A DNA stretch of 64,000 bases from Kudoa neothunni (Eukaryota > Animalia > Cnidaria): contig OZ199840.1 of NCBI GenBank assembly GCA_964304625.1, positions 321,912-385,911 on the forward strand, given 5' to 3'. How positions within the stretch are numbered: the first letter of the stretch is position 1; each line of letters starts with the position of its first letter. Shown one piece after another: positions 8,872 through 64,000 of this stretch. The translations under genes were made by a program, and so were the position numbers. The notes beneath the pieces were generated by a model. That model was not told the origin of the DNA. It made no database searches and was given only the letters and a program-made list of their open reading frames with translations.

Positions 8872-11800
8872 CTAGTCTCTTTTTTTCTTCAATAGCACGA
8901 TTCCAACTATCGCTACAACCATGACCACAGCAACACACGCAATAATGATTCTATAAAAGGTTAGTTCATGTATCAGCATTTAAGAATGTTTACATAAGTT
9001 TGGTTTTATTCCTAAAAAATATTTAATAAAATAAAAAAATATTACTAAGCTCACCCTGAGCTACTTTTTGCTCCTACGATAATTATAACATTAAATCACA
9101 CTGTGAACAAATAATATACCTTGTTGTATGTCAGCAACGCCAAAAATTGTAGCATCTTCAACATTGTAAACAGTCAAATAATAGTCATTTCCATCAGGTA
9201 AATTATTTATTTTGAATTCTTTACAGGTTACAAAGGCAGTACATCTGTCTACGCTTCTTCCCATGCAAGATTTTACTACGGCATTAGATTTGACACTACT
9301 GTTACGTAACTCCCATTTGCATTTTGATTTATCGTTCATACTGGATGGAACTGTGGTGGTTACAATGAAACTGTCCCCATCACGTGTAATGACGACTGAT
9401 ATTAATTTTGAGGAGTCCGTTGGGTTTACTTGTGGTGCAGCTAATACAAGTTTCGTTTAAAAAATTCTTAATAGAGACATTAATTGTAATACTTGGTTCT
9501 ATGATATGCTCTTGTTGTGAAGATTTTCCGATAGCTGTGACTAAAATTTTGTATGTATTTGCCGCTTCATACTCGGGAAATGTTATGGAACTGCAAGTAG
9601 GATTTGAAGAACAGGTGTTTGCGCTGTTCGCGACATCAGCAAGCTGTGTATCTGAAGTATCTGCGACTGAAGAATTCGCTTCTGACATTGGACCATCATC
9701 TGCTGTCGTCGGTATGGCAATTCTAGCTATGTTGAGATCCGCAGAACTTAAACTGGAAGTAGGAGCTGAAGCGGGTGGTGGTGCTACCGGGGCGGTAACA
9801 GGCGTCGCTACTTCCGACACCACTGGACATGTGTAATAATCTATGTAATCGCTACCAGTTTTCTTCTTTACGATATAACTGCATGTTGCAGTTGGATCCA
9901 CGGAATTTAATCTTGCCTTCAATGACAAACCATCCAATGTGATCTTGTGTGTTATCGTTAACGTTGTTAATGCTATAAAAATTTTAAAGAATAAATTATA
10001 ACTTCAATAACCTGTTTGTATATTTGTGTAATCTTTTATGTCGTAATCCTTATGGGCGATGACCCTGATGTCATAAGGTTTGTTTGGCTCAAGGTTTTCT
10101 ATCGTAACTTGTTCACTGCAAATTCCTCTACACGGGGTGTTGCCATTGCATTTTCGCATGGAAAAAGCTATCCATTCCAGTCGGACTCACCAAATACTCA
10201 CAGGTAGGTTCATTTTTCTTTTGTTCAGCTTCAGTTGCGGTAGCAACCATAGCTGTAAGAGAGACTGTCGTGTCTGTCTTTGTAGGATCAGTAGTTCCAT
10301 ACGCTTTACCATCTCCGATTTCTTTATGAATTGTTATTATTATATAAAATAAATATAATGATTCACTCGTTCTTATGAATATATGTTCTTTGAAACCACT
10401 TGGATCATTAATTCCACCAAATGTAATCTCAATTACGTACGCTTTTCCTGCTGAAAGTCCCTCAATTACCAATTTTGAGCAATCAGTGTTGCAAGTGGTG
10501 CTGCTGCTCTGAGTGGTACATGTTGTGCCGGTTGGGGTGGCTGGCTTTGGTTTATCAGCAAAATAATGTTTAAGAGTACATATATTAATTTGTGGATTAG
10601 TTCCTTCTTTAAATGGGGTACCGTCAAACGAAACGCCAACATTAGTATAAGTAGAAAGAAATCCTCCAGCTGGTTCAGTAATTGCTAATGAAAATAATGA
10701 AAAATTCGTCTTAATGTAAGAATTACCGAATTTAGTTTGCGTGTAACCATCCGGACTATCACCGGTAGCTTTTATGTCGTGATACCTTGTTTGGATTAGA
10801 ATTTTATAAATCTTTTTATCCGCGATGCCATTAAGTTCCACGTACTTACATGGGGCGTAACAATCTTTACCGGCACCACCACAAACGGACGTATATGATT
10901 GATCAGTTGCTGCATTCAAACCATCTTTTAGACGGAACAAACATATTTCAGACGACAAGGAATTAGTGAATTTAATTCCAACTTTGTTTTCAATTTTAGT
11001 TACGATATAAAACTGAGGCTCATAAATGGCTATGTTTTTCTTCATATATTGATTGGGCATATCGTAAAAGAAACTGGGGTAATTTCCGCACTTCACTTCG
11101 TAATGAGGTAACAATAAATCAAAATCAACTGTGTTTGCTGTATTATCATTAATACAATCTGTCCCTTTGTTACCATTTACATATTTAATATCTCTATAAA
11201 TAAATAGGACAATCTACAGGTGCGCAAGTTTTTGCTGCGAATTTCAGCTGCTCATTGTCTTTAGACACAGTTATTTGTGGATTAGCCAACAACGCTATAT
11301 AAATTTATTTATATATTGAATTAAATCGGTATACGTGTTGAAAATCCGAATACTTTTCCTCCTGTTGTTCGACTTCCTCCTGTAACATCCCCGGCGCTAT
11401 TCCCGACATGGACGTATATGTATTTGGTTCTTGGTGATAGCTTTTCATAGGTGATTTTATTTTCATCAGTATTACAAATGACAACACATTTACCAGTAAC
11501 ACTAGTTTCAGATTCATTAACATTAGCAGCGCAGCTAACAATGTCTGTAAACTCAGCTAGTATTGTCTGTCCAGTCTGAGCCGCTGCAATTTCTGCTTCT
11601 TTAGATCGCATTATATAGGCACCTCTGGACATTTCCATAATCTGAACCTCCAAGATTGAGTTTCATTTTGTCTGGGTCAGTGCGTGATCCTTTCACAACC
11701 TGGGTATTTGTCAATGTTTTCGTTGGTGCTGCAGATGCATATGCAAACTTGAGGAATTGTATCTCTAGTAGCATTGGCTATGCTTGATATTAAAACACCT

Positions 11801-11872
11801 AAACTTACATTGGTATTAAAATTAACATAGGAAGATACCTAAAACAAGGTAGAGAAATACGGCTATTTTCAT
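8872..11872 (-). CDS. Variable multi-FN3-like type I membrane protein, copy 1 (10 exons; at least three +1 frameshifts in exons 2-3)
   Basis: ATG at 11872 (MKIAVFLYLVL|GVLIS); same intron positions as copy 2; ends VGIVLLKKKRD*. Frameshifts near 11750, 11615 and 11200 may be sequence errors. Confidence 0.85.
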
Positions 11873-11967
11873 GGTTGACAATTAAATGACCTACTAATTG
11901 ATGGTTCGGAATGCAATTGACCCGAATTTCACTTATTTATGGATATAATGATTCATTCATTGTCAGA
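11873..11967 (-). promoter_or_regulatory. Conserved upstream element of the membrane-protein family (copy 1)
   Basis: CTGACAATGAATGAATCA...GTGAAATTCGGGTCAATTG(C/T)ATTCCGA...CATTTAATTGTCAACC-ATG, shared by all five copies. Confidence 0.65.
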
Positions 11968-13216
11968 CGGCAATATTTAGACTAGGCAACAATTATCCAA
12001 GTTACTACAAAATTAATCTAAATCAATTTTTTGCAATCTAGCTTAAATCGTTGTGGTATATTAATTATGACTTATAATGGAATTAAAATTTCTCCATGAT
12101 AAATTGTTATTACGGAAATATCGAAGTATAATGTTAAGTTTTAGCAAAATAATGATAATATTATTTATTATAGTGAGTATTCAATGGTAATGATGTGCTT
12201 ACCGTTTACCAAAATTCGACATCCTGTCGTGACTTTTTCCGAAGATATAGTTCATTCATTCTAAAAAGTTTCAGCAGACAAAAATAAATCAATTTTTTTG
12301 TTTTTAGTGTTCCTAAATTCGTTGTCTTAATCCTCGATGTGGGGCATTAATCTCTTTACAATAATATTTTGAGTATTGTTTTCCAGGTTTAACACATGTA
12401 AATAAACATTTTTGTCAACGTATTCTATCTAATTACTAAAAAATAATTTTTTAAACACGTGGAATCCCTTTATTTGCAGATTTAATCAATTAAAAATGGG
12501 TAAGGAGACGGCTATTAAATTTCAACCGCTAAACTTCATTTATTTTCGCCGATTCTCTCACGATAATTTTTTTACAATTCTACATGTTGGACAAAATCGT
12601 TCAATTCTCAAAAAATTTAGTTATAAAATTTAATAAATCATCGGATTAATCTCCCAGTTGTGTTATTTAAGCCTGTATTATATATATTAGGATTTAAATT
12701 GTTATTTCCTACTTGTATCATGTATACTTCATAGTTATGCACTTTTCATTGTCCATAATGAATCAGATATTTTTTACCAAATGATCAGATGGAATAGTTC
12801 GCGTTAATAATGGTTAGATTCACAATTCGATGGTGTAAAACTAAGGTAACTCCCCGAACTGGTACTTTGTTTCGGGTTGGAATTTGTTTTATCATCCCCA
12901 AAACATAACAGTGAAGATGATATGTATGATTATTTACAACTGGAACATGGATGAAACTATTCTATCCGCCTTTGAAAATACTAATGTAACCACAAGAACA
13001 CCGGGCTATTGTTAAAAAATTAAGAATATTCGTGCGTTTAATGTTCATAAGCGTAAGCCTTTTGATGGTAAAAAGCATTTCATTCAAAATGAAAAAATAA
13101 TCCTTCACGGAAAGCAGAAAATTATTGGGTCGTTGGCCGGCACCTTATATGAATTTTTTTGAAAACTATGGCGTGCCAATTATTTATCATTTCATCAAAT
13201 TATGTATCGCAGTAAC

Positions 13217-15776
13217 TGTAATGAGGGAGTATCCAGCTCCAAAAATTCGGCATCTTCCCGTGCACGCGCATTCCAATTGTGTTATAATTTAATTTAACAC
13301 ATTTTTAAAATATTGAGTGATCACAAATCAGACCAAAATTTTTATTCTGAAGAGTTGCAAAAAATCTCACTTCGGCAACAATCGGACAGCGCGCAATGTA
13401 ATGCTCATACCTTTTCATAACCTTTTTCAGCCTAATTTGTCATAAATAATTCATGAAATTTATATTTCTAATTTTTATAATATTATCAAATATGTTCTGT
13501 GAATTATTAATGAAATTGGACCGGAAGGATATATGTCAGTTATTTATTGTGTTTTTTAACCTTAAGTTTTCATTTTTTACGTTAACGACTCTTAATTGTT
13601 ACTTATAAATTTATTATTTAGTTCATATATTTTTTTGGTGTATTAATATTAAATATATAACGGTATACCGAATAAACCATATTGAAGAAATTGAAAACCT
13701 TATGATATTAAAAACAATATAATGAATAATTCGTTAACTATTTATAATTAGATTATAAACAAGTCCAAAATAAAATATTTAGTGTTGATTTGTACAAATA
13801 TATAAACTACTTTGAGGAACGATCCGTGATAACTATAATTCATAATTAATGTATTGCATAATCATATTGATTATCAAGACTGAGAAACAATTGTGAGTCA
13901 AAAATAAAAAAATTTGTTTTTCTTAAAAAATTTCATAATCTAATTTCATTTATAAGGAAAAATTATTTTTTCATTAATAAAGCCTTAACGGTAAATCATA
14001 AACATATATTTTAATTTATTATCATTAAACGAAAATAAGCGAGAAACCTCAAATATATTTATTGCAAATATAATTTTAATTTTTAGTTAATACTAATACG
14101 GTAAAATCTAAAGTTTTCTTAAGTTTTTTGACAAATAGCAGTATATAAAAGATGAAAGGAATCAAAACACAAATATTTTGTTTTACTAGCTATTATTTAA
14201 TTAGTAAATAGTAGCGATCGCTGGTTAAAATATATTCGAAGAAATTCCAATATCATTTATGAACGGAACGCTGACCATGATTCATGTAGGTTGGAATCCA
14301 GCTGATTTCGTGGTACACCGCTCATTTTCCGAATGAGTTTTGTTTTGAGATGATGCCACACAACCTCGACCGTATTAGTATGGTAACCCTCTGGAGTGAC
14401 ATACTCTTTAGAATGATTAACGGTTATATAGTTATAGCCGTAAATTCGGAGAGAGGTATACCCCAACCACTTGTCAGTATAGATTGTAGTCCCGTTTTCA
14501 ACTTCCTGTAAGACGAGTTGGGTCAACGTTCGTTTATCCCTTTTTTCGACAATAAAAAATCTAGATTCTAACAATTTGCGTTTGTCATCATCTACAGAGC
14601 ATTCGCAAATGCCAACAAACCCAAGGGGCGTTTATTCTGTAACCATACCATTCATTTCTCCGCTGACTTCTCAAAGGAGTCGCTTCACGGAATAACCTAA
14701 TCCTTAAGAAATGGTTAGGGCTGGCCAACCATCTGTCCATGCTTAAAAATCTTCCCCGGTTATTTTTACGGCGACCCCTTAATAAACATTCGTCAATTTC
14801 GACGATTCGATTTTCTCCGCCCATTTGCTCGCGTCGTTGGAACATTTTATAACAAATACTCCACAACGCTGAATACCAAAATGTAACGGTTTTCTCGGTT
14901 ATTTGAGTTAATGCCACCACCTTGCATCTTTGCTCTTCAATACACCAAAGTTATATTAACTCAAATAGCTGAGACACTGTTAATTTGGATACATTCGTCC
15001 CCATCGCGTTATTGATGCCAAAGAAGGTAGAGGTCCTGGGTGAAAAATGCGTTCTACAGTCGCTCTTAAAAATAATATTTTAAAAACTATACATAAAATA
15101 AAAGTCCTTTGAACATGTATACGAGTATTTCTCAATATCATCGTCACAAAGATCGATTGAAGTATTGTTTCTTTTCTCGTTGTAACTTGGAGGCGTAGAG
15201 TGTTATACCTGTGGCAATTCTTGCACCGAGCAGGTGTTTTTTGTAATAGACCCTTATTCGCTAGGTAAGTAAATAGAGCACTCACGTTAAACAAAAGTTT
15301 ATAAAATTGACGCTGAAGTGAAAATTCCGCCATCGAAAAAACTTTTGTTAATCGGATTAAATTATAAAAAAATATAAATTTTTAAATTTAATGTGAGATA
15401 GAAATATATCAGTTACTATTACATCTATAATTATTGAAAATTCAAAACACCGCTAAATAAAATATCTCCTATCCTGTGTGATTCTTTAATCGCGGGAACA
15501 TATTTGATAATATTATAAACATTAGAAATATAAATTTCATGAATTATTTATGACAAATTAGGTTGAAAAAGGTTATGAAAAGGTATGAGCATTACATTGC
15601 GCGCTGTCCGATTGTTGCCGAAGTGAGATTTTTTGCAACTCTTTAGAATAAAAATTTTGGTCTGATTTGTGATTACTCAATATTTTAAAAATGTGTTAAA
15701 TTAAATTATAACACAATTGGAATACGCGTGCAAGGGAAGATGCCGAATTTTTGGAACTGGATACTCCCTCATTACC
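13217..15776 (-). mobile_element. Merlin (IS1016/ISXO2-like) DNA transposon with about 280-bp TIRs, frameshifted transposase
   Basis: Near-identical inverted repeats 13217-13497 and 15496-15776; ORFs 15333-14257 with VEIDE, TTIYTD.W.GY, VNHS...GYHTNTVE..W. Confidence 0.9.
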
Positions 15777-23304: not shown

Positions 23305-26300
23305 ATGAAAATATCTGGATTTCTCTACCTTGTTCTAGGTATTTTTCTGGGTTAATATAATATCAATGTAAGTTTAGGTGTTATAATATCAAGCATAACC
23401 AATGCTAATTCAAGTCCTCAAGCTACACCTGCAGCTCCAAGGAAGACGCTAAAATACCAGATTGTGAAAACTTCAGATGGTAACACAAATGTAATTAAAC
23501 TCAATCTTGGAGGCTCTGATTACGATGCCGGCCCAAAGTGCCGTATAATGCGATCCAACGAGGAGGAAATTTCAATTGCTACTAGTAGTACACCAACAGC
23601 TGAGTTTAAAGACATCAATAGCTGCAGTGATAATGACCAAAATGAAGCTGCTACAAATAAATGCGTGGTCGGTTGTAATACCGATGTTAACACTATTGAA
23701 TACGATAAGCTGTCACCAAGAACCAAATACATTTACGTCTACGTAGGTGCTACCGTACAGGCTGTTACAGGGGAAGATGAAAAAAAAGGGGGGAAAGTAT
23801 TCGGATATTCAATACGTAAATCAATTTAATTTAATATGAAAATCAATTTAATTTAGCATTATTGGCTAATCCACAAATTAGCGTGTCCACGCACACAGGT
23901 AGTAGTGTCGTAAATAAGCTGAAATTCGCAGCAAAAACATGTGCACCTGTAGATTGTCCTATTTATTATAAAGACATAAAATATGATGATGGTACCGCAG
24001 GGACCACTTGTGTTGAAGAAAATACTAAAAATATAGTTGATTATGATTTATTGTTACCTCATTACGAAGTGAGATGCGGAAAATATCCCAGTTTCTTTTA
24101 CAATATGCCCAATCAATATATGAAGAAAACCATAGCAATTTATCAGCCTCAGTTTTATGCTGTTGCAAAAACTGGAGACAAAGTGGGAATTAAATTCACT
24201 AATTCGCTATCATCTGAAATCTGTCTTTTCAGTCTTAAAAATGGTGAAAGTGCAGGAAATAATGAAAAATATACGTCCATTTGTGGTGGAACTGACAAGA
24301 GTTGTTATGCTCCATGTAAGTACGTCGAACTTAATGGCATTGCGAGGAAAAAGATTTATAAAATTTTAATCAAAACAAGGCATCACGACATTGAAGATAC
24401 TAGTGGTGATTTGAAAGGTTACGAACAAATTAAATATGGTAATACTTACATTAAAGAGAATTTTTTATTATTTTCTTTAGCGATTACTGAACCAGAAGGT
24501 GGATTGCTTTCTTCTTACACCAATGTTGGCGTTACGTTTGATGGTACTGTATTTCAAGGAAAAACTAATCCAACATTCACTACGTGTACTCTTAAACACT
24601 ATTTGGCAGACATAATCAAATCAGGATCTCCAACTGAAACAACATGCGACACTAGCAGTAAAAGGGAAGAATCTAGTGATAATAAATGCAAAACTGATTG
24701 CTCAAAATTGGTAATTGAGGGACTTTCAGCAGGAAAAGCGTACGTGATTGAGATTACATTTGATGGAATTAATGATCCAAGTGGTTTTAAAGAACATATA
24801 TTCATAAGAACAGGTAAATCAGTATATATATTTTATAAAATAACGAATTATATATAGCAAAGGGAACAGGTAAAGAGTATGGAACAACTGATCCTACAAA
24901 AACAGACACAACAGTCTCTCTTACAGCTATGGCTGGGCTTTCATCGGGAGAAAAGAAAGATGAACCTACTTGTGAGTATTTAATAAGTCCGACCGGATTA
25001 GATAGCTTTTTCCACGCGAAATGTAATGGCAACACCCCATGTAGAGGAATTTGCAGTGAACAAGTTACGATAGAAGACCTCGAGCCAAACAAACCTTATG
25101 ACATCAGGGTGATTGCACATAAGGATTACGACATAAAAGATTACACAAATATACAAACAGGTTATTGAAATTATAATTTACTCTTTAAATTCTTAATAGC
25201 ATTAACAACATTAACGATAACACACAAGATCACATTGGATGGTTTGTCATTGAAGGCAAGATTAAATTCCGTGGATCCAACTGCAACTTGTAGTTATGTC
25301 GTACAAAAGAAGACTGGTAACGATTACACAGACTATTACACATGTCCTGTGGTATCGAAAGTAACGACACCTGTTACCGCCCCAGTGGTACCACCACCCC
25401 CTTCAGTTGCTCCTCCCAGTTTAAGTTCAGCAGGTCTCAACATAGCTAGAATTGTTGTGCCAATGGTAGCAGATGGTGGCCCAATGACAGCAGCGAAATC
25501 TTCTGTTCCGGGTACTCCAGATACACAGCTTGCTGATGTCGCGAACAGCACAAACACATGTTCTTCAAATCCCCTTTGCAGTTCCATAACATTTCCCGAG
25601 TATGAAGCAGCAAATACATACAAAATTTTAGTCACAGCTATCGGAAAATCTTCACAACAAGAGCATATCATAGAACCAAGTATTACAATTAATGCTTCAA
25701 TTAATGTCTCTATTAAGAATTGTTTAAACGAAACTTATATTAGGTGCACCAAAAGTAAACCCAACTGACTCCTCAAAATTGATATCAGTCGTCATTACAC
25801 GTGATGGGAACAGTTTCATTGTAACCACCACACTTCCAGCCACTATGAACGATAAATCAAAATGCAAATGGGAGTTACGTAACAGCAGTGTCAAGTCAAA
25901 TGCGGTAGTAAAATCTTGCATGAGAAGAAACGTAGACAGATGTGCTGCCTTTGTGACCTGTAAAGAATTCAAAATAAATAATTTACCTGATGGAAATGAT
26001 TATTATTTGACTGTTTACAGTGTCGAAGATGATACAATTTTTGGCGGTGCTGACATTCAACAAGGTATATTATTTGTTACCAATATAATTAAATGTTATA
26101 TATCGTAGGAGCAAAGAGTAGCTCAGGGTGAGTTAAGTAATATTTTTTTATTTTATTAAATATTTTTTAGGAATAAAACCAAACTTATGTAAACATTTTT
26201 AAATGTTGATATTTGAATTAACTGATTTTAGAATCATTATTGCATGCGTTGCTGTGGTTGTGGTTATTGCAATAGTTGGCATCGTGGTATTGAAGAAGAA

Positions 26301-26310
26301 AAGGGATTAA
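23305..26310 (+). CDS. Variable multi-FN3-like type I membrane protein, copy 2 (intact, 868 aa)
   Basis: Exons 23305-23338, 23378-23815, 23857-24438, 24481-24813, 24858-25160, 25200-25679, 25744-26064, 26109-26127, 26171-26188, 26232-26310. All introns GT-AG; 2607 nt open frame. Signal peptide MKISGFLYLVLGVIISS; TM IIIIACVAVVVVIAIVGIVVL; tail KKKRD*. Confidence 0.9.
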
Positions 26311-26474
26311 ATTAATTTTTGTTAACTATAGTTTATAGGTAATATTTATTAATAAAATTTTTCGATCACGTAACATTATTTGATATTTTGAATCATTAGT
26401 TGAATTTATTGTTTTTTAAAATTTGCATGAGGCTTTTGAGAGGAAATATGATCTCCGATATTTTTTTACAATTA

Positions 26475-42216: not shown

Positions 42217-45200
42217 TTAATCCCTTTTCTTCTTCATTACCACGATACCAACTATTGCAATAACCACAACCACAGCAACGCAAGCAATAATGATTCTAAA
42301 ATCAGTTAATTCAAATATTAACATTTAAAAATGTTTACATAAGTTTGGTTTTATCCCTAAAAAATGTTAAATTAAAAAAATCATTTTACTAAACTCACCC
42401 TGAACTACTTTTTGCACCTACGATATATAACATTAAATTATATTGGGAACAAATAATATACCTTGTTGTATATCAACACCGCCAAAAATTGTATCATCTT
42501 CAACACTGTAAACAGTCAAATAATAGTCATTTCCATCAGGTAAATTATTTATTTTGAATTCTTTACAGGTCACAAAGGCAGCACATCTGTCTACGTTTCT
42601 TCTCATGCAAGATTTTACTACCGCATTTGACTTGACACTGCTGTTACGTAACTCCCATCTGCATTTTGATTTATCGTTCATACTGGATGGAACTGTGGTG
42701 GTTACAATGAAACTGTTCCATCACGTGTAATGACGACTGATATCAATTTTGAGGAGTCAGTTGGGTTTACTTGTGGTGCACCTAATATAAGTTTCGTTTA
42801 AGAAATTCTTAATAGAGACATTAATTGAAGCATTAATTGTAATACTTGGTTCTATGATATGCTCTTGTGGTGAAGATTTTCCGATAGCTGTGACTAAAAT
42901 TTTGTATGTATTTGCTGCTTCATACTCGGGAAATGTTATGGAAATGCAAAGGGGATTTGAAGAACAGGTGTTTGCGCTGTTAGCATCCTCAGCAAGCTGT
43001 GTATCTGAAGTATCCGGAACTGAAGATTTCGCTGTTGGTATTGGATCACCATCTGCCACTATGGCACAGCGATTCTAGCTATGTTGAGATCTGCTGAACT
43101 TATACTGGGAGGAGCAGCTGAAGGGGGTACTGGTGCTGGTGCTACTGGGGCGGTAACAGGTGTCGTTACTTTCGATACCACAGGACATGTGTAATAGTCT
43201 GTGTAATCGTTACCAGTCTTCTTTTGTACGACATAACTACAAGTTGCAGTTGGATCCACGGAATTTAATCGTGCCTTCAATGACAAACCATCCAATGTGA
43301 TCTTATGTGTTATCGTTAATGTTGTTAACGCTATTAAAAATTTAAAGAGTAAATTATAACTTCAATAACCTGTTCGTATATCTGTGTAATCTTTTATGCC
43401 GTAATCCTTATGTGCGATCACCCTGATGTCATAAGGTGTGTTTGGCTCAAGGTCTTCTATCGTAACTTGTTCGCTGCAAATTCCTCTGCACGGGGCGTTA
43501 CCATTGCATTTCGCATGGAAAAAGCTATCTAATCCGGTCGGACTTATTAAATACTCACAGGTAGGTTCAGTTGTCTTGTCTGATGGGGAATTCCCACCAA
43601 TAGCTGTAAGAGAGAGTGTTGTATCTGTTTTTGTAGGATCAGTAGTTCCATACGTTTTCCCATTCCGTTTGCTTTATAATTCATTATTTTTTAATATAAG
43701 TATGATGATTTACCTGTTCTTATGAATATATGTTCATTAAAATCCTTTGCAGAATTACTCGCTTCAAACGCGATCTCAATCATGTACGCTTTCCCCGGTG
43801 TAAGTGTTTGAATCACCAATTTCGTTGAGCAATCAGTTTTGCAACTGGAACCTTCTGTACTAGTATTATCACATGTTGTTGTAGTTAAGGTGTCTGGTTT
43901 GATTTTGTCTGCAAAGTAGTGTTTTAGAGTACATTTATCGATTATTGGTTCAGACTCTCTTTTAAATAAGGTACTATCAAATGACACTCCCTGATGCGTG
44001 TACACTGACAGGAGTCCTCCAGTTGGTTCAGTAATAGCTAATAAAAATAATACAAACTGCATATTGATTTAAGGATTACCAAATTTAGTTTGTTCGTAAC
44101 CCTTCAAATCACCACTAGTAGCTTCTATGTCATGATGTCTTGTTTTGATTAAAATTTTATAAATCTTTTTCCCCGCAATGCCATTAAGTTCGACGTACTT
44201 ACATGGAGCATAACAACTCTTGTCAGTTCCACCACAAATGGACGTATATTTTTCATTATCTCCTGCATTTTGAACATTTTTAAGACTGAAAAGACAGATT
44301 TCAGACGATGGAGAATTAGTAAATTTAATTCCCACTTTATCTTCAGTTTTGGCAATAATATAAAACTGGGGCTTATAAATATCAATATTTTTCTTCATAT
44401 ATTGATTGGGCATATTGTAAAAGAAACTGGGATAATTTTCGCACCTCACTTCATAATGCGGTAACAATAAATCAAAATCAACTGTGTTTGCTGTATTATC
44501 ATTATTACAATCGTTCCCTTTGTTACCTTCCGCATATTTAATATCTTTATAATAAATAGGGCAATCTACAGGTGCACATGTTTTTGCTACAAATTTCAAT
44601 TTATTTTTGTCGGTTTCTACTGTAACCGTAGACACGCTAATTTGTGGATTAGTCAACAATGCTATATTCAGTTTATTTTTATGTTAAATTAAATTTATTT
44701 ACGTATTGAATATCCGAATACTTTTGCTCCTGTTCCGTTAGTTTTCTCTTTAATTTCACTTGTGTTGTCGCCTACGTAGACGAATATGTATTTGGTTCTT
44801 GGTGAGAGTTTATCGTAAGTGATTTTATTCACGTCAATATTACATACGACAATACATTTACCCTCAGCACCAGAATCGCTAACCTTAGCAGTGCAGCTGT
44901 CGATATCTTTGAATTCAGCTGCTGTCGTAGTAGTAGGAGTAATTGAAATTTCCGCCTCGTTAGATCGCTTTAAAAGGCACTTTTTGTTAGCACCATAATC
45001 AGAACCTCCGAGGTTTATGTTAATTTGGTCTGGGCTATTAGTTTCACCTTTCACAACCTGATACTTGAGCGTTTTCGCTGGAGTTAGAGTAGGAGATGCT
45101 GCTGCTGCAGCTGGAGAATGTTGGCTTACTGCAGCATTGGTTTTTATTGATATTAAAACACCTACACATACATTAATATTAAAATTAACTCAGGAAGGTA

Positions 45201-45235
45201 CCTAACGCAAGGTAGAGAAATCCAGCTATTTTCAT
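42217..45235 (-). CDS. Variable multi-FN3-like type I membrane protein, copy 3 (about three -1 frameshifts)
   Basis: ATG at 45235 (MKIAGFLYLAL); conserved introns; ends VVMKKKRD*. Single-base deletions near 43660, 43060 and 42718. Confidence 0.85.
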
Positions 45236-52860: not shown

Positions 52861-53989
52861 AAAATTATACAATATATGACTTATTTATGCTAACTTAAAT
52901 GTATTAAGAAAATGCGAGTTAGGCCAAAATTATAATTTAAAAGAAATATATCTAGACTTAAACGAGGTTATTATTTGAATGTTTCCCATCGATTACTGAG
53001 TGAAAACTAAAATGTTGAAGCATGCATATTGTAATTCCCGAGTACCGCTGACGCCCCAAGGCGTGTTATTAGGAAATTGTTAAAATTAAAACTATTGTTA
53101 AATTTTTATTTGTTACCATATTCTAAAATCATGAAAAGTTGAGTCATGTTTAAGCCGGGAATTTTGGTTGGGCTGAACAAGCCGAACTTAAGGGATTGGA
53201 TACTTCTCCATTACCCAAGTTTCATACCAAAATGACATTATGATTTGAAATTATTGTAATTTTTAATTATATTTTTTAGATATTGATTCCGGATAAAATT
53301 TAGAATAATACTTGTCATTGTTTTATGGTATTAATTTGATATTTTCTTTTTTAAATGGTATTTACTGGAATTTTATGTGTTTCATTGATAGAAATATTTT
53401 AAGTTACATTTTATTAGACTGCGCTAGATGAGTATTATTTAGTTACATCATACTTTTTAAATATATCGTTAGTAATAATCCCATTTAATATCATAAAACG
53501 TAACAACGTGGTTATGATCATACTTTTCTTGAATAAACAAATATTTGACAATAGTGAAATGATAAGACGTCTGTTTCTAGTACGTTTTTTACATATTTAA
53601 TATTTATTTGAATTAGATTTATGGTCATTACATAAAAATAACCATCATACAAGAATTTATCCCTTCCTATCTGTGTTCTTATAATGATATATCATTGTTG
53701 GTGTTTTTATCTCTCATTAGAAAAGAAAAATATCATTTTAAAATAAATAGTAATCACAATCATAATAGGAAATATAACAAGCCAAATACCCTAAAACAGT
53801 TTTTGAGTTTGGTGAGTTATGGCCACGCCCTGAATTTTTGTTAGGGTGCATCCGTAATAGAGGGCGAAATTTCGTCATGTCAAAGTTCTAATTAATTTAC
53901 CACATCGACGCGGGCTAGATGCTAAAAAATTGGTTGAGATTAATTTTTTAATATCATGAATAATTATTATCTAGTCTAAGTTTTGTTAT

Positions 53990-54083
53990 CTGGCAATGAA
54001 TGAATCACTATATCAATAATTGAGTAAAATTCGGGTCAATTGTATTCCGAGCTATCAATTGGTAAGTCATTTAGTTGTCAACC
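53990..54083 (+). promoter_or_regulatory. Conserved upstream element (copy 4)
   Basis: Same approximately 95-bp block. Confidence 0.65.
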
Positions 54084-57076
54084 ATGAAAATAGCTGGATT
54101 TCTCTACCTTGCGTTAGGTACCTTCCTGAGTTAATTTTAATATTAAAGCTAATATAAGTTCAGGTGTTTTAATATCAACCACAGCCAATACTAATGAAAG
54201 TTCAAATCCTCAAGCTGCACCTGTAGCCCCAACAAAAACGTTGGCATATCAAATTGAGAAAGATGCGACAAGTAGCGCAGACCAAATTAAAATCAAACTT
54301 GGAGGCTCTGAATATGGAACTGGCAAAAAATGCCTTATACGTCGATCTAACGAAGCAGAAATCGCGGCGACTACCTCTGGTCAGGTACCAGCAGCTGAGT
54401 TTAGAGACATCGACACTTGTGTTGCTAAAGTTAGTGATTCGAGTGTTATTAATAAATGTGTTGTCGAATGTAATACTGACGCGAATAAAATCACCTACGA
54501 TAAACTCTCACCAAGGACCAAATACATATATGTCTACGTAGGCACCGTTGCAACTGAGGTTCAAAATAAAGTTCAGGGAGCAGAAGCAAAAGTATTCGGA
54601 TACTCAATACGTATATTATATTTTTAATTTGAAAATAAATTGAATTTAGCATTGTTGGCTAATCCACAAATTAGCGTGTCTACAGAAACCAATCAGTTGA
54701 AATTCGCAGCAAAAACATGTACACCTGTAAATTGCCCTATTTTTTACAAAGATGTCAAATACGCCAATGGTGCCAAGGTGGAAAGTTGTAATGCTGGGAA
54801 TTCGGAAAACATAGTGGATTTTGATTTATTGCTTCCGCATTACGAAGTAAGATGCGAAAATTATCCCAGTTTCTTTTACAATATGCCCAATCAATATATG
54901 AAGAAAAACATAGATATTTATAAGCCTCAGTTTTATATTGTTGCAAAAATTGGAAACAAAGTGGGAATTAAATTCACCAATTCCCCGTCGTCTGAAATAT
55001 GCCTATTCAGCCTTAAAGATGATCAGCAGACGACGAGCAATCCACCATACATTTCTCAATGTGGTGGAACTGACAAAAGTTGTTATGCACCATGTAAGTA
55101 CGTCGAACTCAATGGCATTGAGGGAAAAAAAGTTTATAAAGTTTTAATCCAAACGAGGCATCACGACATAGAAGCTACTAGTGGTGATTTGAAAGGTTAC
55201 GAACAAACTAAATTTGGTAATCCTTATATTAGGACGCATTTTTTTATATTTTTTTAGCATTTACTGAACAAAATGGAGAATTGCTGTCAGCCTATACGAA
55301 TATTGGTGTTACGTTTGAAGATGCCACATTAAAAACAAGAACTACTCCAATAATGAATACGTGTACACTTGATCATTATTTTGCTGATAAACCAAAGCCA
55401 ACCACTCTAACTGCCACAACATGTGATGATACTAGTACAACTAATAACAGATGCAACATTGATTGCTCAAAATTGGTAATTCAGGGACTTTCAGCGGGAA
55501 AAGCCTACATGATTGAGATCTCATTTGAAGGCGCTAGTATTACACAAGGTTTTAAAGAACATATATTCATAAGAACGAGTGAATCATTATATTTATTTTA
55601 TATAATAATAACAATTCATAAAGAAATCGGAATTGGAAAAGCATATGGAACTACCGATCCTACAAAAACAGACACAACAGTCTCTCTTACAGCTATGGCT
55701 GGGCTTTCATCGGGAGAAAAGAAAGATGAACCTACCTGTGAGTATTTGGTGAGTCCGGCTGGATTGGGCAGCTTTTACTATGCGAAATGTAATGGGAACA
55801 CCCCGTGTAGAGGAATTTGCAGTGAACAAGTTACGATAGAAAACCTTGAGCCAAACAAACCTTATGACATCAGGGTCATCGCACATAAGGATTACGACAT
55901 AAAAGATTACACAAATATACAAACAGGTTATTGAAGTTATAATTTATTCTTTAAAATTTTTATAGCATTAACAACGTTAACGATAACACACAAGATCACA
56001 TTGGATGGTTTGTCATTGAAGGCAAGATTAAATTCCGTGGATCCAACTGCAACATGCAGTTATATCGTAAAGAAGAAAACTGGTAGCGATTACATAGATT
56101 ATTACACATGTCCAGTGGTATCGGAAGTAGCGACGCCTGTTACCGCCCCGGTAGCACCACCACCCGCTTCAGCTCCTACTTCCAGTTTAAGTTCCGCAGA
56201 TCTCAACATAGCAAGAATTGCTGTGCCAATGGTAGCAGATGGTGGTCCAATGCCTGCAGCGAAATCTTCAGTCGCAGATACTTCAGATACACAGCTTGCT
56301 GATGTCGCGAACAGCGCAAACATATGTTCTTCAAATCCCCTTTGCAGTTCCATAACATTTCCCGAGTATGAAGCAGCAAATACATACAAAATTTTAGTCA
56401 CAGCTATCGGAAAATCTTCACCACAAGAGCATATCATAGAACCAAGTACTACAATTAATGCTTCAATTAATGTCTCTATTAAGAATTTCTTAAACGAAAC
56501 TTATATTAGGTACACCAAAAGTAAACCCAACTGACTCCTCAAAATTGATATCAGTCGTCATTACACGTGATGGGAACAGTTTCATTGTAACCACCACACT
56601 TCCAGCCACTATGAACGATAAATCAAAATGCAAATGGGAGTTACGTAACAGTAGTGTCAAGTCTAATGCGGTGGTAAAATCTTGCATGAGAAGAAACGTA
56701 GACAGATGTGCTGCCTTTGTGACCTGTAAAGAATTCAAAATAAATAATTTACCTGATGGAAATGATTATTATTTGACTGTTTACAGTGTCGAAGATGATA
56801 CAATTTTTGGCGGTGCTGACATTCAACAAGGTATATTATTTGTTACCAATATAATTAAATGTTATATATCGTAGGAGCAAAGAGTAGCTCAGGGTGAGTT
56901 AAGTAATATTTTTTTATTTTATTAAATATTTTTTAGGAATAAAACCAAACTTATGTAAACATTTTTAAATGTTGATATTTGAATTAACTGATTTTAGAAT
57001 CATTATTGCATGCGTTGCTGTGGTTGTGGTTATTGCAATAGTTGGCATCGTGGTATTGAAGAAGAAAAGGGATTAA
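54084..57076 (+). CDS. Variable multi-FN3-like type I membrane protein, copy 4 (intact)
   Basis: Exons start at 54084, 54164, 54650, 55258, 55624, 55966 and 56510, followed by the two micro-exons and the TM exon; frame open throughout; ends KKKRD*. Confidence 0.9.
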
Positions 57077-57240
57077 ATTAATTTTTGTTAACTATAGTTT
57101 ATAGGTAATATTTATTAATAAAATTTTTCGATCACGTAACATTATTTGATATTTTTAACCATTGGTTGAATTTATTGTTTTTTGAAATTTGCATGAGGCT
57201 TTTGAGAGGAAATATGATCTCCGATATTTTTTTATAATTA

Positions 57241-58210
57241 AAGTAAACAACCAATTTTCCGTAATCCTCTCGGGATCATGGAAAAGTTGCTGAAAATGCG
57301 TCAGTGATGTATTTTCCGTAACTTCCCGCGTGCGCCACAATTAAAAAAATAAACCTGTTTTAAAAAAAATTCATTTCATTTATACAATCATCTACCTTTA
57401 TTTAAACAATATGTTATTTTATGTTAAATTTAATTATATTTTTAAATGTGTATGCTGTAATTTTATGATGTGAATTCATTATTTCGTTCGGATAATCAAT
57501 TCCTCTCTGTAGTATATTTTTTTCTGCATGTTTAAACATTTAAACGAATCTTTTGATGATATAAATTCTACCACACGTTCATCTTCATTATCAAAATATA
57601 TAGATTCAATAATCAAAAGAGTAAGCTTATCAAAGTGTTTTGATGTAGGCATATTGATTTCCTTTTTAATAATCTCGGAATCTCCAGCTGAGAATTCTTT
57701 ATTGCTAAAATTAATATTTGATGAACGCTCGCATTCATGGGATGCAGGAATCCCATATTTCCTGAAACAGTTAAATACAATATCCTTTGAAACACCGTCC
57801 CAAGGTTTTTTAATTACTAACAATGTTTTAAGCGAATCTTGGGAGGATGTATTTATATCACTGTCAATTGCAGCAATATTGTTTTCCATTGAATTATTTT
57901 TGTAATTTAATAGGAATGAGAAAATGATTCTATGGTCTAATTGTTGCAAAACGCCAGTTGAATTTGTTGTAAGTAATATAAGAGAGACATTGGACAAATG
58001 AATTTCGGCGTGGTAAGTAGCATTATTAAGAAATAGCGAAACTTTCTTGTACTTCGTTTTGAATACATTGTCGAAATTAGAAGGATATTTGTTAAATATT
58101 TCCCAAATCATCCTTTCTTTCCTGTTTGATTTGTATTTTACTATAAATGTTTTAGAATTTTTAAAACAACGTGGTTTTTGTGATTTTCAATCACAAGAGA
58201 TTCAATGAAA
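57241..58210 (-). mobile_element. Duplicate of the left part of the Tigger remnant at 26475
   Basis: Near-identical to 26475-27443 and at the same distance from the gene's stop codon. Confidence 0.85.
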
Positions 58211-58561: not shown

Positions 58562-60087
58562 ATGAAAGTCTTTTTACTTATCTTTATCTGTGTTGTCTCT
58601 GCATACATCCCTCTTTCTTTTCTCACTGGCGCTAGTAGTTTAATCGAATGTGATTACGTTTATATTAATTTTAGCATATACAACATATGATTTTGATTCT
58701 ACAAAAAATCATAGGCTTCATTTACAATCTTTTCCTACCAGATATTACCTTCATAAAGATACAGCTACATGCAAAAGCTTTTCGTACAGAGGAGCCAGCG
58801 GATCTAACTTCAATAATTTTGCGTCGTTAGAAGAATGCAACAAAGAACGTAACATTACAGTTTATTTTATATTTCTATATTAATTTAGTTGAATATGATT
58901 ATGCGAGTCGAGTTGGTGCTTGCCAGGCTGTAGGAAACCCTAGTTTGAACAGTGACCTTCAGAGAAATGGTGATGGTTCATTCAACGTTTGTAACAAATC
59001 GCCCATCGACAGATATTACTTCAAAAAAGGATCTACTTCAGATGATGCAGGAACTTGCCACACATGTAAATATAAAGGATGCAATGAGCCAAAGTACTCA
59101 TTCCCAAGTGAGGAAGCTTGCAAGGGCACGTGCATAAGTAATGTATTATTCATTCGTGCTATTTATAATTGAAAATAGCAACTGACGACGCCTACAAAGT
59201 ACCTAACATGGTTGACTGCGAAGTGGGTGCCATTTTAACTTCAAATAATGCTGCTGCAACAGAAATCAATATCGTGCGTGACAACGAAAATTCCACATGT
59301 GTCCATGCGATCGTAGACAAACAATCAGGAGTACGTGGTGTTTTTGAGTTATTTTCTCAATTCCAAAAGAAGCGTGACGGTAATAAAAATAAATTCATTA
59401 AATAAACTTAATACGTAAATTTAGCTGATGAAGCAACAACTAAAAGATGTGATGTGAATCTGCTGCATACCAACCAACAACCGAAGGGCATATAACAACC
59501 AAATATTACTACAATTCCACAAATAAATTCTGCATGCAAATGATGGCAGTTGATATTGAATTGGACTCAACCAAAAATTATTTCGATACAGCCAGAGAAT
59601 GTATTAGTGCATGCCCCGCTCGTATGCTCCTTTTATTAGTTAGAATTATACAATTTAATGTTTAAAGTTAATGATGATGAAACAGTTGTTAATTTGCCGG
59701 ATATCCTCACTGTATGTAGTGACCCCAAAAGAACCTGGTAATGGAAACGAAGTAAGCACATTGCCAAGATGGTATTATGATGAGATAGAAAAGTTGTGTA
59801 AAAGATTTACATATACTGGAATTGGTGGAAATGCGAACAACTTTGAAAGTGAAGCCCTTTGCAATTACATTTGCATTGAAGGTGTTAATGCAGTTATTTT
59901 ACCCGAACCAACAACTACCCCATCAACTAAAACTGAGACTACTACTACTGCCACTACAGCTTCTGAAAGTAACGAAGAACCTGCACCAAGCAATACTGCA
60001 ACAGAACCTGATGATGATGAGGAAGAGGCGGTTGATCAACCAGAAACGGAAGAGACACAACCTGAAGCAGAAGGTGTCATTTCTTGA
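58562..60087 (+). pseudogene. Five-Kunitz secreted protein, copy B (probable pseudogene)
   Basis: Same exon structure as copy A; 5-nt duplication GATGT near 59450, +1 near 59724, and two Cys lost in domain 3 (SQFQKKRD vs SQCQKKCH). Confidence 0.8.
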
Positions 60088-60274: not shown

Positions 60275-62200
60275 CAATAGGTAACTGGTCTCACGCATTT
60301 CTTGGTGAACAAGAAAAAAAATTCGTAAAATTGGTCACGCCCGGTTCCACATACTTTAATGCTTGCGAAAAATGATGAGGAATTTATTTTTTATTGCAAC
60401 GAACTCATTCAAAAAAATTCTTTATTATTCAATACTGAAATATAAATATGTGTTATAAATGAAAAATCGAATAGATTATGTACGAGAAAAATATTTTGTT
60501 ATTTTAGTTTGTTTCATATTGTTTGAAATAATCTTAAATATCGACTCTTCTGCTGCATTAAAAATAATATTTTGACTATTATCATGCACCCTAAAAATGG
60601 TTTTAATTCCTTCAAATATTCTAAAGCCTTTTTGCTGGTAATAATTTTGTTTCTGTGGAGTTCTTCCTCATTATGTGTTCCATCCTTGTCAGATTGTTCT
60701 GCATCGTTAGTGTTTAAAACCTTAAAAAATTTAATTAAAATAAAAGTGTCAAATATCTTATTGGTGTCTAGTATTTGATCATTTTGGTTATATCATTTGC
60801 AGTCAAGTCATAAGTAAATTTTTCATCATTATCAATTAATAAATCACTCTGAGTTGAGGCAAATCTTAGCGAGAAAAATCCTGCTTTTACGAAAAAATTT
60901 TGATTGTATTTTTGGAAACGCTCTCCCAGGTAGTTTTAATTAAACCTATTGCTTCCAAAACGTTTGGTGGAGTTAGTTTGTTGAGGGTTAATCTAATCCT
61001 ACCTCCACAATAATTTACACATTATATTTACGTAGTTAGTCGTTAATCTGTATTATTATTATTACTGTGAAAAACGTGTCTCTATCAGCGTACATAACAT
61101 TGTTCTAATCCCATTTCAACACAAGAAATGAATCGTTCTATCATCGACTTCTTGTAGCATCATTATAGGAATGGATGACGCCCTCATCTAACGCGTAACG
61201 CTAGTGGTGTTTGGGGGGGGGGGGGGGATATTAATTTTACGTTAGAAAAATCTTTTTGACTTTTTTAGTAAAGTTTTCATTAATTTTTGAAATGTATCTC
61301 AAGAAAATATCCCCAGTCATCCAAGCCTTTTTGTTGGATTCGAATAAAAGGGTTAACTTCTTAATATTCTTGAAGCAACGTGGTTTTTTATTCGGTCTGA
61401 TTATCAATGGATCTAGCTTTTCTCCGCTCAACGAAGCTTCTAATAAAATCGTCAAACGTTTTTTTGATTTTTTTTGTCCCGCCTGTATTGTTCTCGGATG
61501 AATGAACATAACTATTACCTTAAAACCCATTACAGAATAAATTGAGAAATATTCAACACACTGCTGTTGATTTTTTTTTACGAGGTAAAACCCCTTGCGC
61601 AACTTATTAGGTTGTAGAATTCTGGTTGGTCAGACCTCTTCCATTAACGCTTTAGGCACCGCGGGACGTAACATGAAACCCCGCCCCTTATCTTTATACG
61701 GTAGTGTGGGACTATAACCCATTAAACATCCTCGTCTCAGAGCGACCACAACCCCAAACCCTATTATCCCTTTAAGGATGTTGGCTCTGTGAGGACTACA
61801 AATTACTTGCCTTTCGATTGGTTCCGGAGATTCAAACTCCTATTCAAGCTCATCCCACTTCACGCGAATTTGGTTGCTAATGCATCCCACTCGACAGCGA
61901 GCGTACACTTTAACCAGAGCTCCCTAACATGGGATAGAGACCCACCGACATGGAAGCAGTAATCTGACCATTGGCGGATTCGAACCCATTACCTCAGGGT
62001 TCTGAGTCCGAGCGTCACACAGATGTGCTATCTGTCCTCGGCTGTTAACATTGTTGAATTAAGTCGATTCCCTGGATAAATTGGTTTTATAAAGTCACAG
62101 CTAGTTTGTGATTAAACAGTCCAATAAATTCCATTTTTATATTTTATTACTCATGAAAAGATATATGGGAGTTTATGTTTACCCGCGATTTGTTCGTTCA
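60275..62200 (-). mobile_element. Decayed Tigger element interrupted by a SINE
   Basis: KKSKKRLTILL..SLSGEKL.PLII...KPRCFK, SNKKAWMTGDIF, PPNTTSV..LDEGVIHSY; TIR-like TA-CAATAGGTAAC at 60275. Confidence 0.75.
61571..62040 (-). mobile_element. tRNA-derived SINE (about 470 bp)
   Basis: On the minus strand: A-box-like TAGCACATCTGTG, B-box GGTTCGAATCC, GC-richer body and A9 tail; TSD GCTGTT(G/A)A at 61563-61570 and 62041-62048. Confidence 0.75.
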
Positions 62201-62932
62201 CCATGAGCATGGTTTCATTTTGTTCATAAAATATTATATTATCTACATTACGTTATTTTTATTAATCAAACATAAACTTAAATTGAATAAATAACGAACA
62301 TATATATCTAAAAAATGAATATAGGTGCCATTTTAACCTGGCACCAATCCAGAATTCAAGGCATTTTTATCCGAAAATTCCAGCAAAGAGTTGTTGCAAA
62401 TTATGATTGCTGAAATTTCGATTAAACGAAATGTTTTATTTAGAATCTACAACGTTTTCAAATATATTTTAAAAAATCATTCGTATAGCGGGATTTTAGG
62501 ATAAATGGGGTTCGACTTTATATATAAAAGTAATTATTTTAGAATAATTAGAACTTATTATTTTATGTCTTTAAGGCTGCATTAGAAAAAATATTCAGAT
62601 TACGCTTTCCGAGGTCCTTCCGCATTGGTACAATAAACAGAAGGGGCATGTGTCTATTTAGACATGATTTTTGTCTCGAGGAAACTTATCCATTTAATAC
62701 ATGACTGGAACAATACTAAATACTCTCTATAATAAATAGTATTACCGTTATTTTTCTAAAGTTTAATATTTTACTTCCATATTACCCCAAAAAACAATGT
62801 AATGAGGGAAAAGTTTTGTTCCATTAAAAGTTCTAATTAATTTACCACACCAATATGAGCTAGATTTCAAAAAATGGTTTATATTAATATTTCAATAACT
62901 TGAAAGATTGTTGTCTAGTGTAAGCTTTGCCA

Positions 62933-63027
62933 TCTGTCAATGAATGAATCATTATATCCGTAAATGAGTGAAATTCGGGTCAATTGTATTCCGAACCATC
63001 AATTGGTAGTTCATTTAATTTTCAATC
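62933..63027 (+). promoter_or_regulatory. Conserved upstream element (copy 5)
   Basis: Same block; homology to copies 1 and 3 extends upstream to about 62730. Confidence 0.65.
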
Positions 63028-64000
63028 ATGAAAATAGCTGGATTTATTCACCTTGTTTTAGGTACCTCTTCGTGAGTTAATTTTAATACTAATGTAAGTT
63101 TAGGTGTTTTAATATCCGGCACAATCAATACTCCTGCAGCTCAAGGTCCTCAAGCTGCAAGCTGCGCCTTCAGATTCAGTACCAACGAAAACACTGAAAT
63201 ATCAGATCGTGAAAGATGCAGCTACTAGCTCGGACCAAATTAAAATCAAACCTTGAAGGCTCTGGTTATGAAAGGAACAAATTTTGTCGTATAATGCGAT
63301 CTAACGAAGCAGAAATTACAAAGGCTGCCACTCCTGCAAATACGCCAGCTACATTTATAAGCATCGCTGCCTGCAGTGCTACCTCTGCTGACGCTTCTGA
63401 TCAATGTGTTATCACTTGTAACACTGATGAGAATAAAATACCCTATGAAAAACTATCACCAAGAACTAAATACATATTCGGTCTATGTTGGCACTGCAGC
63501 AACTACTATTAAAAGCATAGATCACGGACCTGAAGCAAAAGTATTCGGATATTTCAATACGTGAGTCAATTTATTTAATATTAAAATAATTTGGATTTAG
63601 CATTGTTGGCTAATCCACAAATTACCGTGTCTACAGAAACTAATAAGCTGAAATTCGTAGCAAAAACTTGCGCACCTGTAGATTGTCCTATTTATTATAG
63701 AGATATTAAATATGTAAATGGTAACAAAGGGACAGATTGTAATAATGATAATACAGCAAACACAGTTGATTTTGATTTATTGTTACCTCATTACGAAATA
63801 AGATGCGAAAATTATCCTAGTTTCTTTTACAACATGCCCAACCAATATATGAAGAAAAACATAGCCATTTATAAGCCTCAGTTTTATATTGTATACAAAA
63901 CTGAAGGAAAAAATCGGAATTAAATTCACTAATTCGCTTTCATCTGAAATATGCTTGTTCAGTCTTAAAAATGGTCAAAGTGAAGGAAATACTGCAAAAT
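63028..64000 (+). CDS. Variable multi-FN3-like membrane protein, copy 5 (5' part; runs off the window; about five +1 frameshifts)
   Basis: MKIAGFIHLVL|GVLIS, KLSPRTKY, LLANPQI, LLLPHYE.RC.NYP; single-base insertions near 63160, 63251, 63480, 63553 and 63912. Confidence 0.8.

What the first reader, a model, noticed from the sequence alone, without database searches (positions are those of the whole stretch)
8872..64000. Cluster of five paralogous, hypervariable single-pass surface proteins: candidate undescribed variant-antigen or recognition system
Seen: five copies within 55 kb share exon-intron structure, signal peptide and Cys skeleton, and the four complete copies share the TM helix and tail. 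Exon 2 (membrane-distal) differs heavily, with indels, while exons 7-10 are nearly invariant. I do not recognise the protein. Established: a variable distal part on a conserved anchor with a minimal tail is the design of parasite variant surface proteins (e.g. Giardia VSPs) and of clustered invertebrate allorecognition receptors. Inference: a host-interaction or self/non-self family under diversifying selection.
Basis: partly seen in the sequence, partly recalled or inferred. Interest (0 to 1): 0.9.

Follow-up and report, generated by a model that had tools for sequence, protein, structure and literature searches.

The report
Huge variable surface-protein family, fish parasite
A microscopic parasitic relative of jellyfish that lives in tuna muscle devotes more than 200 of its roughly 5,300 predicted genes to one family of membrane-anchored proteins with variable tips, which I did not find described in the papers I could search; they are the best candidates for how it changes its face to the fish immune system, though nobody has yet shown them expressed or switching.

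Summary
Observation confirmed and much enlarged. The genome matches the myxozoan Kudoa neothunni (size, three chromosomes, GC, TAAACC telomere). The five copies are 10-exon genes for ~865-aa type I membrane proteins: signal peptide, seven FN3/Ig-like beta-sandwich domains each with four invariant Cys, one TM helix, tail KKKRD. They belong to a ~35-gene subfamily within a family of at least ~225 loci, nearly all with open exon-3 frames. Paralogs are mosaics (exon trees incongruent, long identical tracts). Domains 1 and 4 are most variable (56-59% identity); the near-constant base is largely homogenised by gene conversion. dN/dS is below 1 for every exon; only two loops of domain 1 exceed 1, robustly against a recombination control. 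Frameshifts in copies 1, 3, 5 look like low-coverage assembly errors (one tested). Multi-member homologs with the same introns occur in five other unnamed samples. Not Giardia-type VSP (no CXXC), not Hydractinia Alr. Best reading: host-facing variant surface repertoire under immune selection; expression and switching untested. The scan's readers noted this family in other windows of this genome.

The parts
8872..11872 (-). Copy 1, 10 exons (11872-11839, 11798-11335, 11294-10727, 10684-10367, 10321-10012, 9972-9493, 9440-9120, 9073-9055, 9011-8994, 8950-8872); three 1-bp frameshifts as assembled (about 11616, 11200, 10154)
   Evidence: the extra base at 11198-11200 is absent from every covering contig of three runs of the source sample, so probably an assembly error
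23305..26310 (+). Copy 2, intact, 868 aa; exons 23305-23338, 23378-23815, 23857-24438, 24481-24813, 24858-25160, 25200-25679, 25744-26064, 26109-26127, 26171-26188, 26232-26310
23378..23815 (+). Exon 2 of copy 2 = domain 1, FN3-like beta-sandwich; strands dN/dS 0.25, loops about 1.0, the A-B and F-G loops 3.6 and 2.5
23857..24438 (+). Exon 3 of copy 2 = domains 2 and 3 (two beta-sandwiches, 8 invariant Cys)
24858..25160 (+). Exon 5 of copy 2 = domain 5, the one with a sequence-level fn3 match
   Evidence: Pfam fn3 E 2.6e-4, below the curated cut-off; FN3 domains of titin, NCAM2, contactin by profile
26109..26310 (+). Micro-exons 8-9 (Ser/Gly linker) and exon 10 (TM helix and 5-residue basic tail) of copy 2
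42217..45235 (-). Copy 3, 10 exons; three 1-bp deletions as assembled (about 43662, 43062, 42719), two of them in base runs
   Evidence: not tested with reads
53880..54083 (+). About 200 bp upstream of the ATG, shared by the subfamily (82-91% column identity, higher than introns 1-4): probable common promoter/5'UTR
54084..57076 (+). Copy 4, intact, 862 aa; mosaic (exon 2 nearest to L001, exon 6 to copy 1, exons 7-10 and ~970 bp downstream to copy 2)
63028..64000 (+). Copy 5, exons 1-3 (part); four 1-bp insertions in base runs as assembled; continues beyond the window (G000 C3 to about 388.2 kb)

Best explanation
A lineage-specific repertoire of host-facing surface proteins of the myxozoan parasite Kudoa. 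Each gene encodes a secreted-pathway type I membrane protein: a rod of seven disulfide-stapled FN3-like domains held by one TM helix and a basic stop-transfer tail with no signalling motif (architecture shown from sequence, fold predicted, surface location inferred). The repertoire grew by DNA-level duplication into at least ~225 loci (shown, lower bound). Segmental gene conversion or recombination between paralogs homogenises the membrane-proximal exons and reshuffles domain-sized variable segments (shown), while the fold core is under purifying selection and exposed loops of the tip domain are neutral to positively selected (shown, with caveats). The inferred driver is recognition by fish antibodies or cells; the inferred use is display of different members in different cells, stages or times so that the surface changes (not shown). 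Strict one-gene-at-a-time switching is only about 0.25 likely; stage-specific subsets are as plausible.
For: Organism match to K. neothunni. FN3-like fold. Mosaicism: exon trees share 0-3 of 15 splits and reject each other (AU p<0.001); 23 of 276 pairs have identical tracts longer than any of 200 permutations. Selection: exon 2 M2a vs M1a 2dlnL 26.1 against a maximum of 12.7 in 16 null simulations with mosaic trees; A-B and F-G loops dN/dS 3.6 and 2.5, 2dlnL 12-14 each. Same architecture with a YKKK tail and the same introns in a 17%-GC relative; several <50%-identical members per sample in other samples. Stage-specific antigen change is reported for myxozoans including K. thyrsites (PMC8481699).
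Against: No RNA or protein evidence: the one RNA run laid gave no reads and is no test. Whole-exon dN/dS is below 1 everywhere; site-model signals in exons 3-7 (2dlnL 3.7-10) lie within the recombination null. The two loops were picked among seven after the fact. Sporogonic Kudoa stages sit inside muscle cells, partly hidden from antibody (PMC8481699). Copies share a similar promoter and no expression site was seen.
Confidence: 0.55

Rival explanations
1. A co-expressed repertoire of adhesins or ligand-binding/decoy receptors: the variable loops bind different host molecules (matrix, muscle-cell or annelid-host surface proteins, cytokines); diversity serves binding range, not escape.
For: FN3 tandems are adhesion/receptor modules (established knowledge); closest folds of domain 1 are cytokine-receptor FN3 domains (IFNAR1 Z 7.0); variable loops on a conserved sandwich resemble binding scaffolds; taeniid EG95 is an FN3 invasion-stage antigen (PMC2671473).
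Against: Z 7 is within the background range for this search (note); more than 200 mosaic genes exceed what a fixed set of ligands needs; loops are mostly near neutral.
Confidence: 0.2
2. A self/non-self or cell-identity code inside the parasite (homophilic adhesion between cells of one clone, cell-in-cell development, or mate recognition in the invertebrate host), analogous to Hydractinia Alr.
For: Myxozoans are cnidarians; Alr genes are clustered single-pass proteins, one domain per exon, with an Fn3-like domain (PMC9546547); here too mostly one domain per phase-1 exon.
Against: No Alr or other free-living cnidarian protein among the profile hits; tip domain is FN3-like rather than V-set; no Tyr motif in the 5-residue tail; genes lie on all three chromosomes.
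Confidence: 0.1
3. A structural or intracellular protein (spore valve, capsule, plasmodial coat, or ER/Golgi-retained through the C-terminal dilysine) whose loops drift neutrally; expansion is for dosage.
For: Loops overall have dN/dS 0.98; KKKRD formally fits KKxx/KxKxx ER-retrieval motifs (own knowledge).
Against: Two intact copies end at KKK and the distant homolog ends YKKK, which break the motif; the lysines abut the membrane; dosage does not explain deep divergence among subfamilies or dN/dS above 1 in two loops.
Confidence: 0.1
4. Selfish or neutral expansion (transposon cargo, decaying duplicates) without function.
For: Copies sit among transposon fragments; three of five window copies are frameshifted as assembled.
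Against: Invariant Cys and splice sites, in-frame indels, strand dN/dS 0.25, open frames in nearly all loci; homology fades gradually about 200 bp upstream and 250 bp downstream with no sharp common ends; breaks look like read errors; conserved in other species.
Confidence: 0.05

Closest known systems
Giardia / Spironucleus VSPs, and the VSP-like genes reported in Sphaerospora molnari (bioRxiv 10.64898/2026.02.11.705288)
   Same: Multigene family of type I membrane proteins with signal peptide, variable Cys-containing ectodomain, conserved TM and very short tail.
   Different: No CXXC or CXC, 3.3% Cys, FN3-like fold, intron-rich, at least ~225 loci versus 18 in S. molnari; switching not shown.
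Taeniid oncosphere FN3 antigens (EG95 family; PMC2671473)
   Same: FN3-domain surface antigens of an animal parasite with positively selected sites.
   Different: EG95 is GPI-anchored with one FN3 domain; here seven 4-Cys domains, a true TM with basic tail and hundreds of loci; no sequence match found.
Hydractinia Alr family (PMC9546547)
   Same: Cnidarian clustered single-pass proteins, domain-per-exon, includes an Fn3-like domain.
   Different: [quoted passage not shown]
Protozoan variant surface families (Plasmodium rif/stevor/pir, Toxoplasma SRS, trypanosome VSG) - from own knowledge
   Same: Large, partly sub-terminal arrays, mosaic evolution by gene conversion, variable distal part on a conserved anchor.
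   Different: No sequence or Pfam match; different fold; occurs in a metazoan.
FN3-repeat ectodomains of R3 receptor tyrosine phosphatases (DEP-1/CD148) and cytokine receptors
   Same: Language-model features and fold searches point to these FN3 domains (scores 0.84-0.88): a lead for the family's origin.
   Different: No phosphatase or any cytoplasmic domain; no significant sequence similarity; four extra Cys per domain.

Membership tests
VSP (diplomonad type) | >10% Cys and more than 5 CXC/CXXC motifs | tested here: not met
   3.3-3.5% Cys, 0 CXXC, 0 CXC; definition
VSP (diplomonad type) | Signal peptide, single C-terminal TM, short conserved tail | tested here: met
   hydropathy and tails; the tail does not fit the S. 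molnari [KR]X[KR]XK[KR] motif
Antigenic-variation system (functional class) | Large paralogous repertoire with variable exposed part and recombination between copies | tested here: met
Antigenic-variation system (functional class) | Positive selection on exposed residues | tested here: inconclusive
   met for two loops of domain 1; not separable from recombination in other exons
Antigenic-variation system (functional class) | Surface location, mutually exclusive expression and switching | not testable with these tools
   no parasite RNA among served runs
Fibronectin type III superfamily (fold) | Beta-sandwich of FN3 topology with the E-F strand signature | tested here: met
   domain 5: Pfam fn3 E 2e-4 (under cut-off) and PDB FN3 hits; domain 1: model pLDDT 73, best matches FN3 domains, Z up to 7; domains 4, 6, 7 by repeat pattern only
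Hydractinia Alr | N-terminal V-set Ig domain followed by I-set domains | tested here: not met
   domain 1 matches FN3 folds best; no Ig Pfam hit at E<10; domain 2 is a small Ig-like sandwich of low confidence
Hydractinia Alr | Cytoplasmic tail with ITAM/ITIM; single gene complex | tested here: not met
   5-residue tail without Tyr in the 24 copies read; loci on all three chromosomes; tails of the other subfamilies not read
Hydractinia Alr | Allele-specific homophilic binding | not testable with these tools
   needs a cell assay
EG95/45W taeniid antigens | GPI-anchored, FN3-containing; sequence homology to EG95 | tested here: not met
   basic residues follow the hydrophobic helix; no such hit in profile searches
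Receptor tyrosine phosphatase / kinase | Cytoplasmic catalytic domain | tested here: not met
   stop codon 5 residues after the TM; the four PTP matches of the genome lie outside the subfamily's genes

The most novel reading that the evidence does not exclude
A true antigenic-variation system in an animal parasite: several hundred FN3-rod surface genes, one or a few expressed per parasite cell or per cell generation of the cell-in-cell cycle, with new variants made by domain-wise gene conversion; the molecular basis of the antigen changes long inferred for myxozoans.
Probability: 0.25. Interest if true: 0.85.

Novelty: new variant of a known kind. Interest (0 to 1): 0.62.

Why it matters
Myxozoans have among the smallest animal gene sets and cause losses in fisheries and aquaculture with no vaccine; antigen change during infection has been inferred but its genes are unknown for Kudoa. 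A family equal to about 4% of the predicted gene count, not mentioned in the genome paper or found in my literature searches, gives named, testable candidates (which member is expressed in which cell; do fish antibodies see domain 1; is the conserved domain 7 a shared marker for diagnosis). Repertoires of this size and mosaic type are typical of protozoan parasites and rare in animals (own knowledge).

Tried and rejected
PDB sequence search with exons 3-4: nothing. Foldseek with domain 1: no match at E<=0.001; Atlas shape search TM<0.5. Word-based homolog searches: none for exons 3-4, one fragment for exon 5; these are length-limited. Bacterial FN3-repeat hits (P0015-17) match only a 36-44-residue C-x3-C stretch: shared FN3 signature, not membership. 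Profile-profile comparison between the family's own domains is weak (E 0.025-0.16). Conserved hairpin in the 5' leader: z -1.4, not supported. Literature searches for Kudoa or myxozoa with fibronectin, and for the sample accessions, found no description. Site-model positives in exons 3-7 rejected as within the recombination null. Reading copies 1, 3, 5 as pseudogenes: not accepted, breaks look like read errors.
Full report
Observation. The window holds five similar ~3.3-kb segments, 77-87% identical, in alternating orientation. Aligning them gave a ten-exon model with GT-AG introns of 39-64 nt; copies 2 and 4 translate without a stop into 868 and 862 aa, while copies 1, 3 and 5 carry single-base indels. 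The same exon borders hold in 20 further copies taken from the genome, 18 of the 24 complete copies having all internal exons open. The product has a hydrophobic N-terminus, one hydrophobic helix at the very end and the tail KKKRD. Twenty-eight cysteines, four per domain, are invariant.

Source organism. The window is C3:321,912-385,911 of a 40.26-Mb assembly with contigs of 17.15, 12.04 and 11.05 Mb and one of about 18 kb. A (TAAACC)n array sits at one end of one chromosome only. Weber, Paulini and Blaxter (PMC12239612) report for Kudoa neothunni, assembled from about 7-fold reads in a yellowfin tuna sample, 40.2 Mb, N50 12.0 Mb, three chromosomes, 30.4% GC, 49-bp introns, 5,316 predicted proteins and that same telomere motif at one end. 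The runs that hold the sequence have 830-880 million letters of contigs, a host-sized genome.

Size of the family. A DNA search with copy 4 found about 35 close copies on all three chromosomes. The union, counted by eye, is about 225 loci, a lower bound and about 4% of the predicted gene count. Exon-7 matches lie 1.5-1.9 kb behind exon-3 matches, so the wider family shares the layout at least to domain 7. About 30 loci lie in the first 461 kb of chromosome 3, which includes this window; other clusters are both sub-terminal and internal.

Protein anatomy. Exon 5 matches Pfam fn3 (E 2-3e-4, under the cut-off) and its profile finds FN3 domains of titin, NCAM2 and contactin. AlphaFold2 models give a beta-sandwich for exon 2 (pLDDT 73) and two sandwiches for exon 3 (pLDDT 63). 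The best structural matches of domain 1 are FN3 domains of cytokine receptors and adhesion proteins, but at Z 7.0 or less, which shows a fold and no function; domain 2 resembles small Ig-like sandwiches. Language-model neighbours are fn3 clusters at lead-level scores. Domains 4, 6 and 7 are assigned by the repeated four-Cys and strand pattern. So: signal peptide, seven FN3/Ig-like domains, a Ser/Gly linker on two micro-exons, TM, five-residue basic tail. There are no CXXC motifs and Cys is 3.3%.

How it varies. Mean protein identity over 18 copies is 59, 72, 56, 79, 81 and 90% for exons 2-7 and 90% for the TM/tail; synonymous divergence falls the same way (0.43-0.63 in exons 2-4, 0.14 in exon 7), as do introns (0.19-0.26 for introns 1-4, 0.08-0.10 for introns 5-6). 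The constant base is therefore largely recent homogenisation, not only stronger constraint. Each copy's nearest relative changes from exon to exon, 23 of 276 pairs share identical tracts longer than any in 200 permutations, and trees of different exons share 0-3 of 15 splits and reject one another. Codon models give whole-exon dN/dS of 0.27-0.50. A positively selected class is favoured in exon 2 (2dlnL 26.1; 7% of sites, omega 2.9); in 16 simulations without positive selection on mosaic trees the statistic reached 12.7 at most, so exon 2 passes and exons 3-7 (3.7-10.0) do not. Using the predicted structure, strands of domain 1 have omega 0.25, loops 0.98, and the A-B and F-G loops 3.6 and 2.5 (2dlnL 12-14 each; two of seven loops examined). 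About 200 bp upstream of the start codon is better conserved than introns 1-4 and occurs only in front of subfamily members.

Broken copies. The ten breaks in copies 1, 3 and 5 are single-base indels, nearly all in base runs, all insertions in copies 1 and 5 and all deletions in copy 3, without other decay. For the one that could be judged, the extra base of copy 1 at 11198 is missing from every covering contig of three runs, including one otherwise identical over 135 nt. They are probably consensus errors of a low-coverage assembly; the others remain untested. The RNA run laid gave no reads and is no test of expression; the genome paper also found very few parasite transcripts.

Relatives. 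A profile search of 1.84 billion proteins returned 16 family-like fragments and three bacterial FN3 repeats matching a short motif. The eleven fragments traced come from unnamed contigs of five samples, three of which hold three mutually distant members each. They have small AT-rich introns at the same positions; one has lost intron 2 and reads straight through the predicted junction, which independently supports the splice model. One 17%-GC contig holds a whole gene with seven domains, linker micro-exon, TM and the tail YKKK. A neighbour on another contig of that sample, a ribosomal S14 gene, has its only outside match in this genome (51%), 10 kb from a family cluster. These are most likely other Kudoa or related myxozoans (inference). 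The exon-3 profile returned no named animal protein.

Mechanism. Shown: architecture, size, mosaicism, purifying selection on the core, elevated dN/dS in two tip loops, conservation across species. Inferred: surface display; selection by fish immunity; differential expression. The best reading is a variant surface repertoire (0.55), followed by a co-expressed adhesin or decoy repertoire (0.2), a self-recognition code (0.1), a structural or ER-retained protein (0.1) and neutral expansion (0.05). Myxozoans, K. thyrsites among them, are reported to change antigens between stages, and cell-in-cell development has been proposed as a frame for this (PMC8481699).

Comparison and novelty. It works like protozoan variant surface families in design but fails the VSP sequence definition used for Sphaerospora molnari, differs from Hydractinia Alr in tip domain, tail and distribution and from taeniid EG95 in anchor, domain number and scale. 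The genome paper does not mention fibronectin, surface proteins or gene families, and searches for Kudoa or myxozoa with fibronectin found no description; the library lacks most subscription papers. I rate it a new variant of a known kind. First-stage readers noted the same family in many other windows of this genome; those notes are not independent support.

Limits. Database searches were made exon by exon (or with natural read-through ORFs) by reference; the joined spliced protein was not sent to any database search, and was built only inside scripts for translation, statistics and local comparison with contigs already fetched. No contig taken for human was met.

Noticed in passing
window ~35776-37310 (+) and ~58563-60087 (+): Two paralogous multi-exon genes with a hydrophobic N-terminus, several Kunitz-like Cys domains (last one Pfam Kunitz E 1.7e-15) and an acidic Thr-rich tail; 78% identical; probable secreted protease inhibitors inside the array.
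   Followed up: partly
window 20978-22466, 28369-29812, 47654-49060: A 1.44-kb non-coding dispersed repeat with at least 40 copies genome-wide; ends resemble short hAT-type terminal inverted repeats.
   Followed up: partly
window 26474-27443 and 57240-58210: Copies 2 and 4 share about 970 bp downstream, including a decayed DDE_1 (pogo/Tigger) transposase: a conversion or duplication tract running past the gene end.
   Followed up: partly
window 954-1754, 3966-4851, 52100-52639, 61237-61602: Transposon remnants between copies: SWIM-bearing (MULE-like) transposase, Tc5/DDE_1, and a DUF5641 (BEL/Pao-type, own knowledge) fragment.
   Followed up: partly
G000 C3:2961522, C3:2976712 (-) and C2:7951426 (+): Three of the genome's four tyrosine-phosphatase matches lie within about 6-25 kb of family members; possibly chance, possibly a trace of a receptor-phosphatase origin.
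   Followed up: no
G000 C1:13258309 and 13258724: One family member has two tandem copies of the domain-7 exon.
   Followed up: no
L021:2130-2166 and L027:3100-3400: Distant homologs carry a Pro/Thr repeat after domain 6 (L021) or a long Asn/Asp-rich insertion inside domain 6 (L027), where the window's copies have a Pro/Ala/Ser-rich insertion.
   Followed up: no
window 13215-13497 / 15496-15778: A 283-bp inverted repeat pair, 97% identical, about 2 kb apart: probable terminal repeats of a DNA transposon.
   Followed up: no
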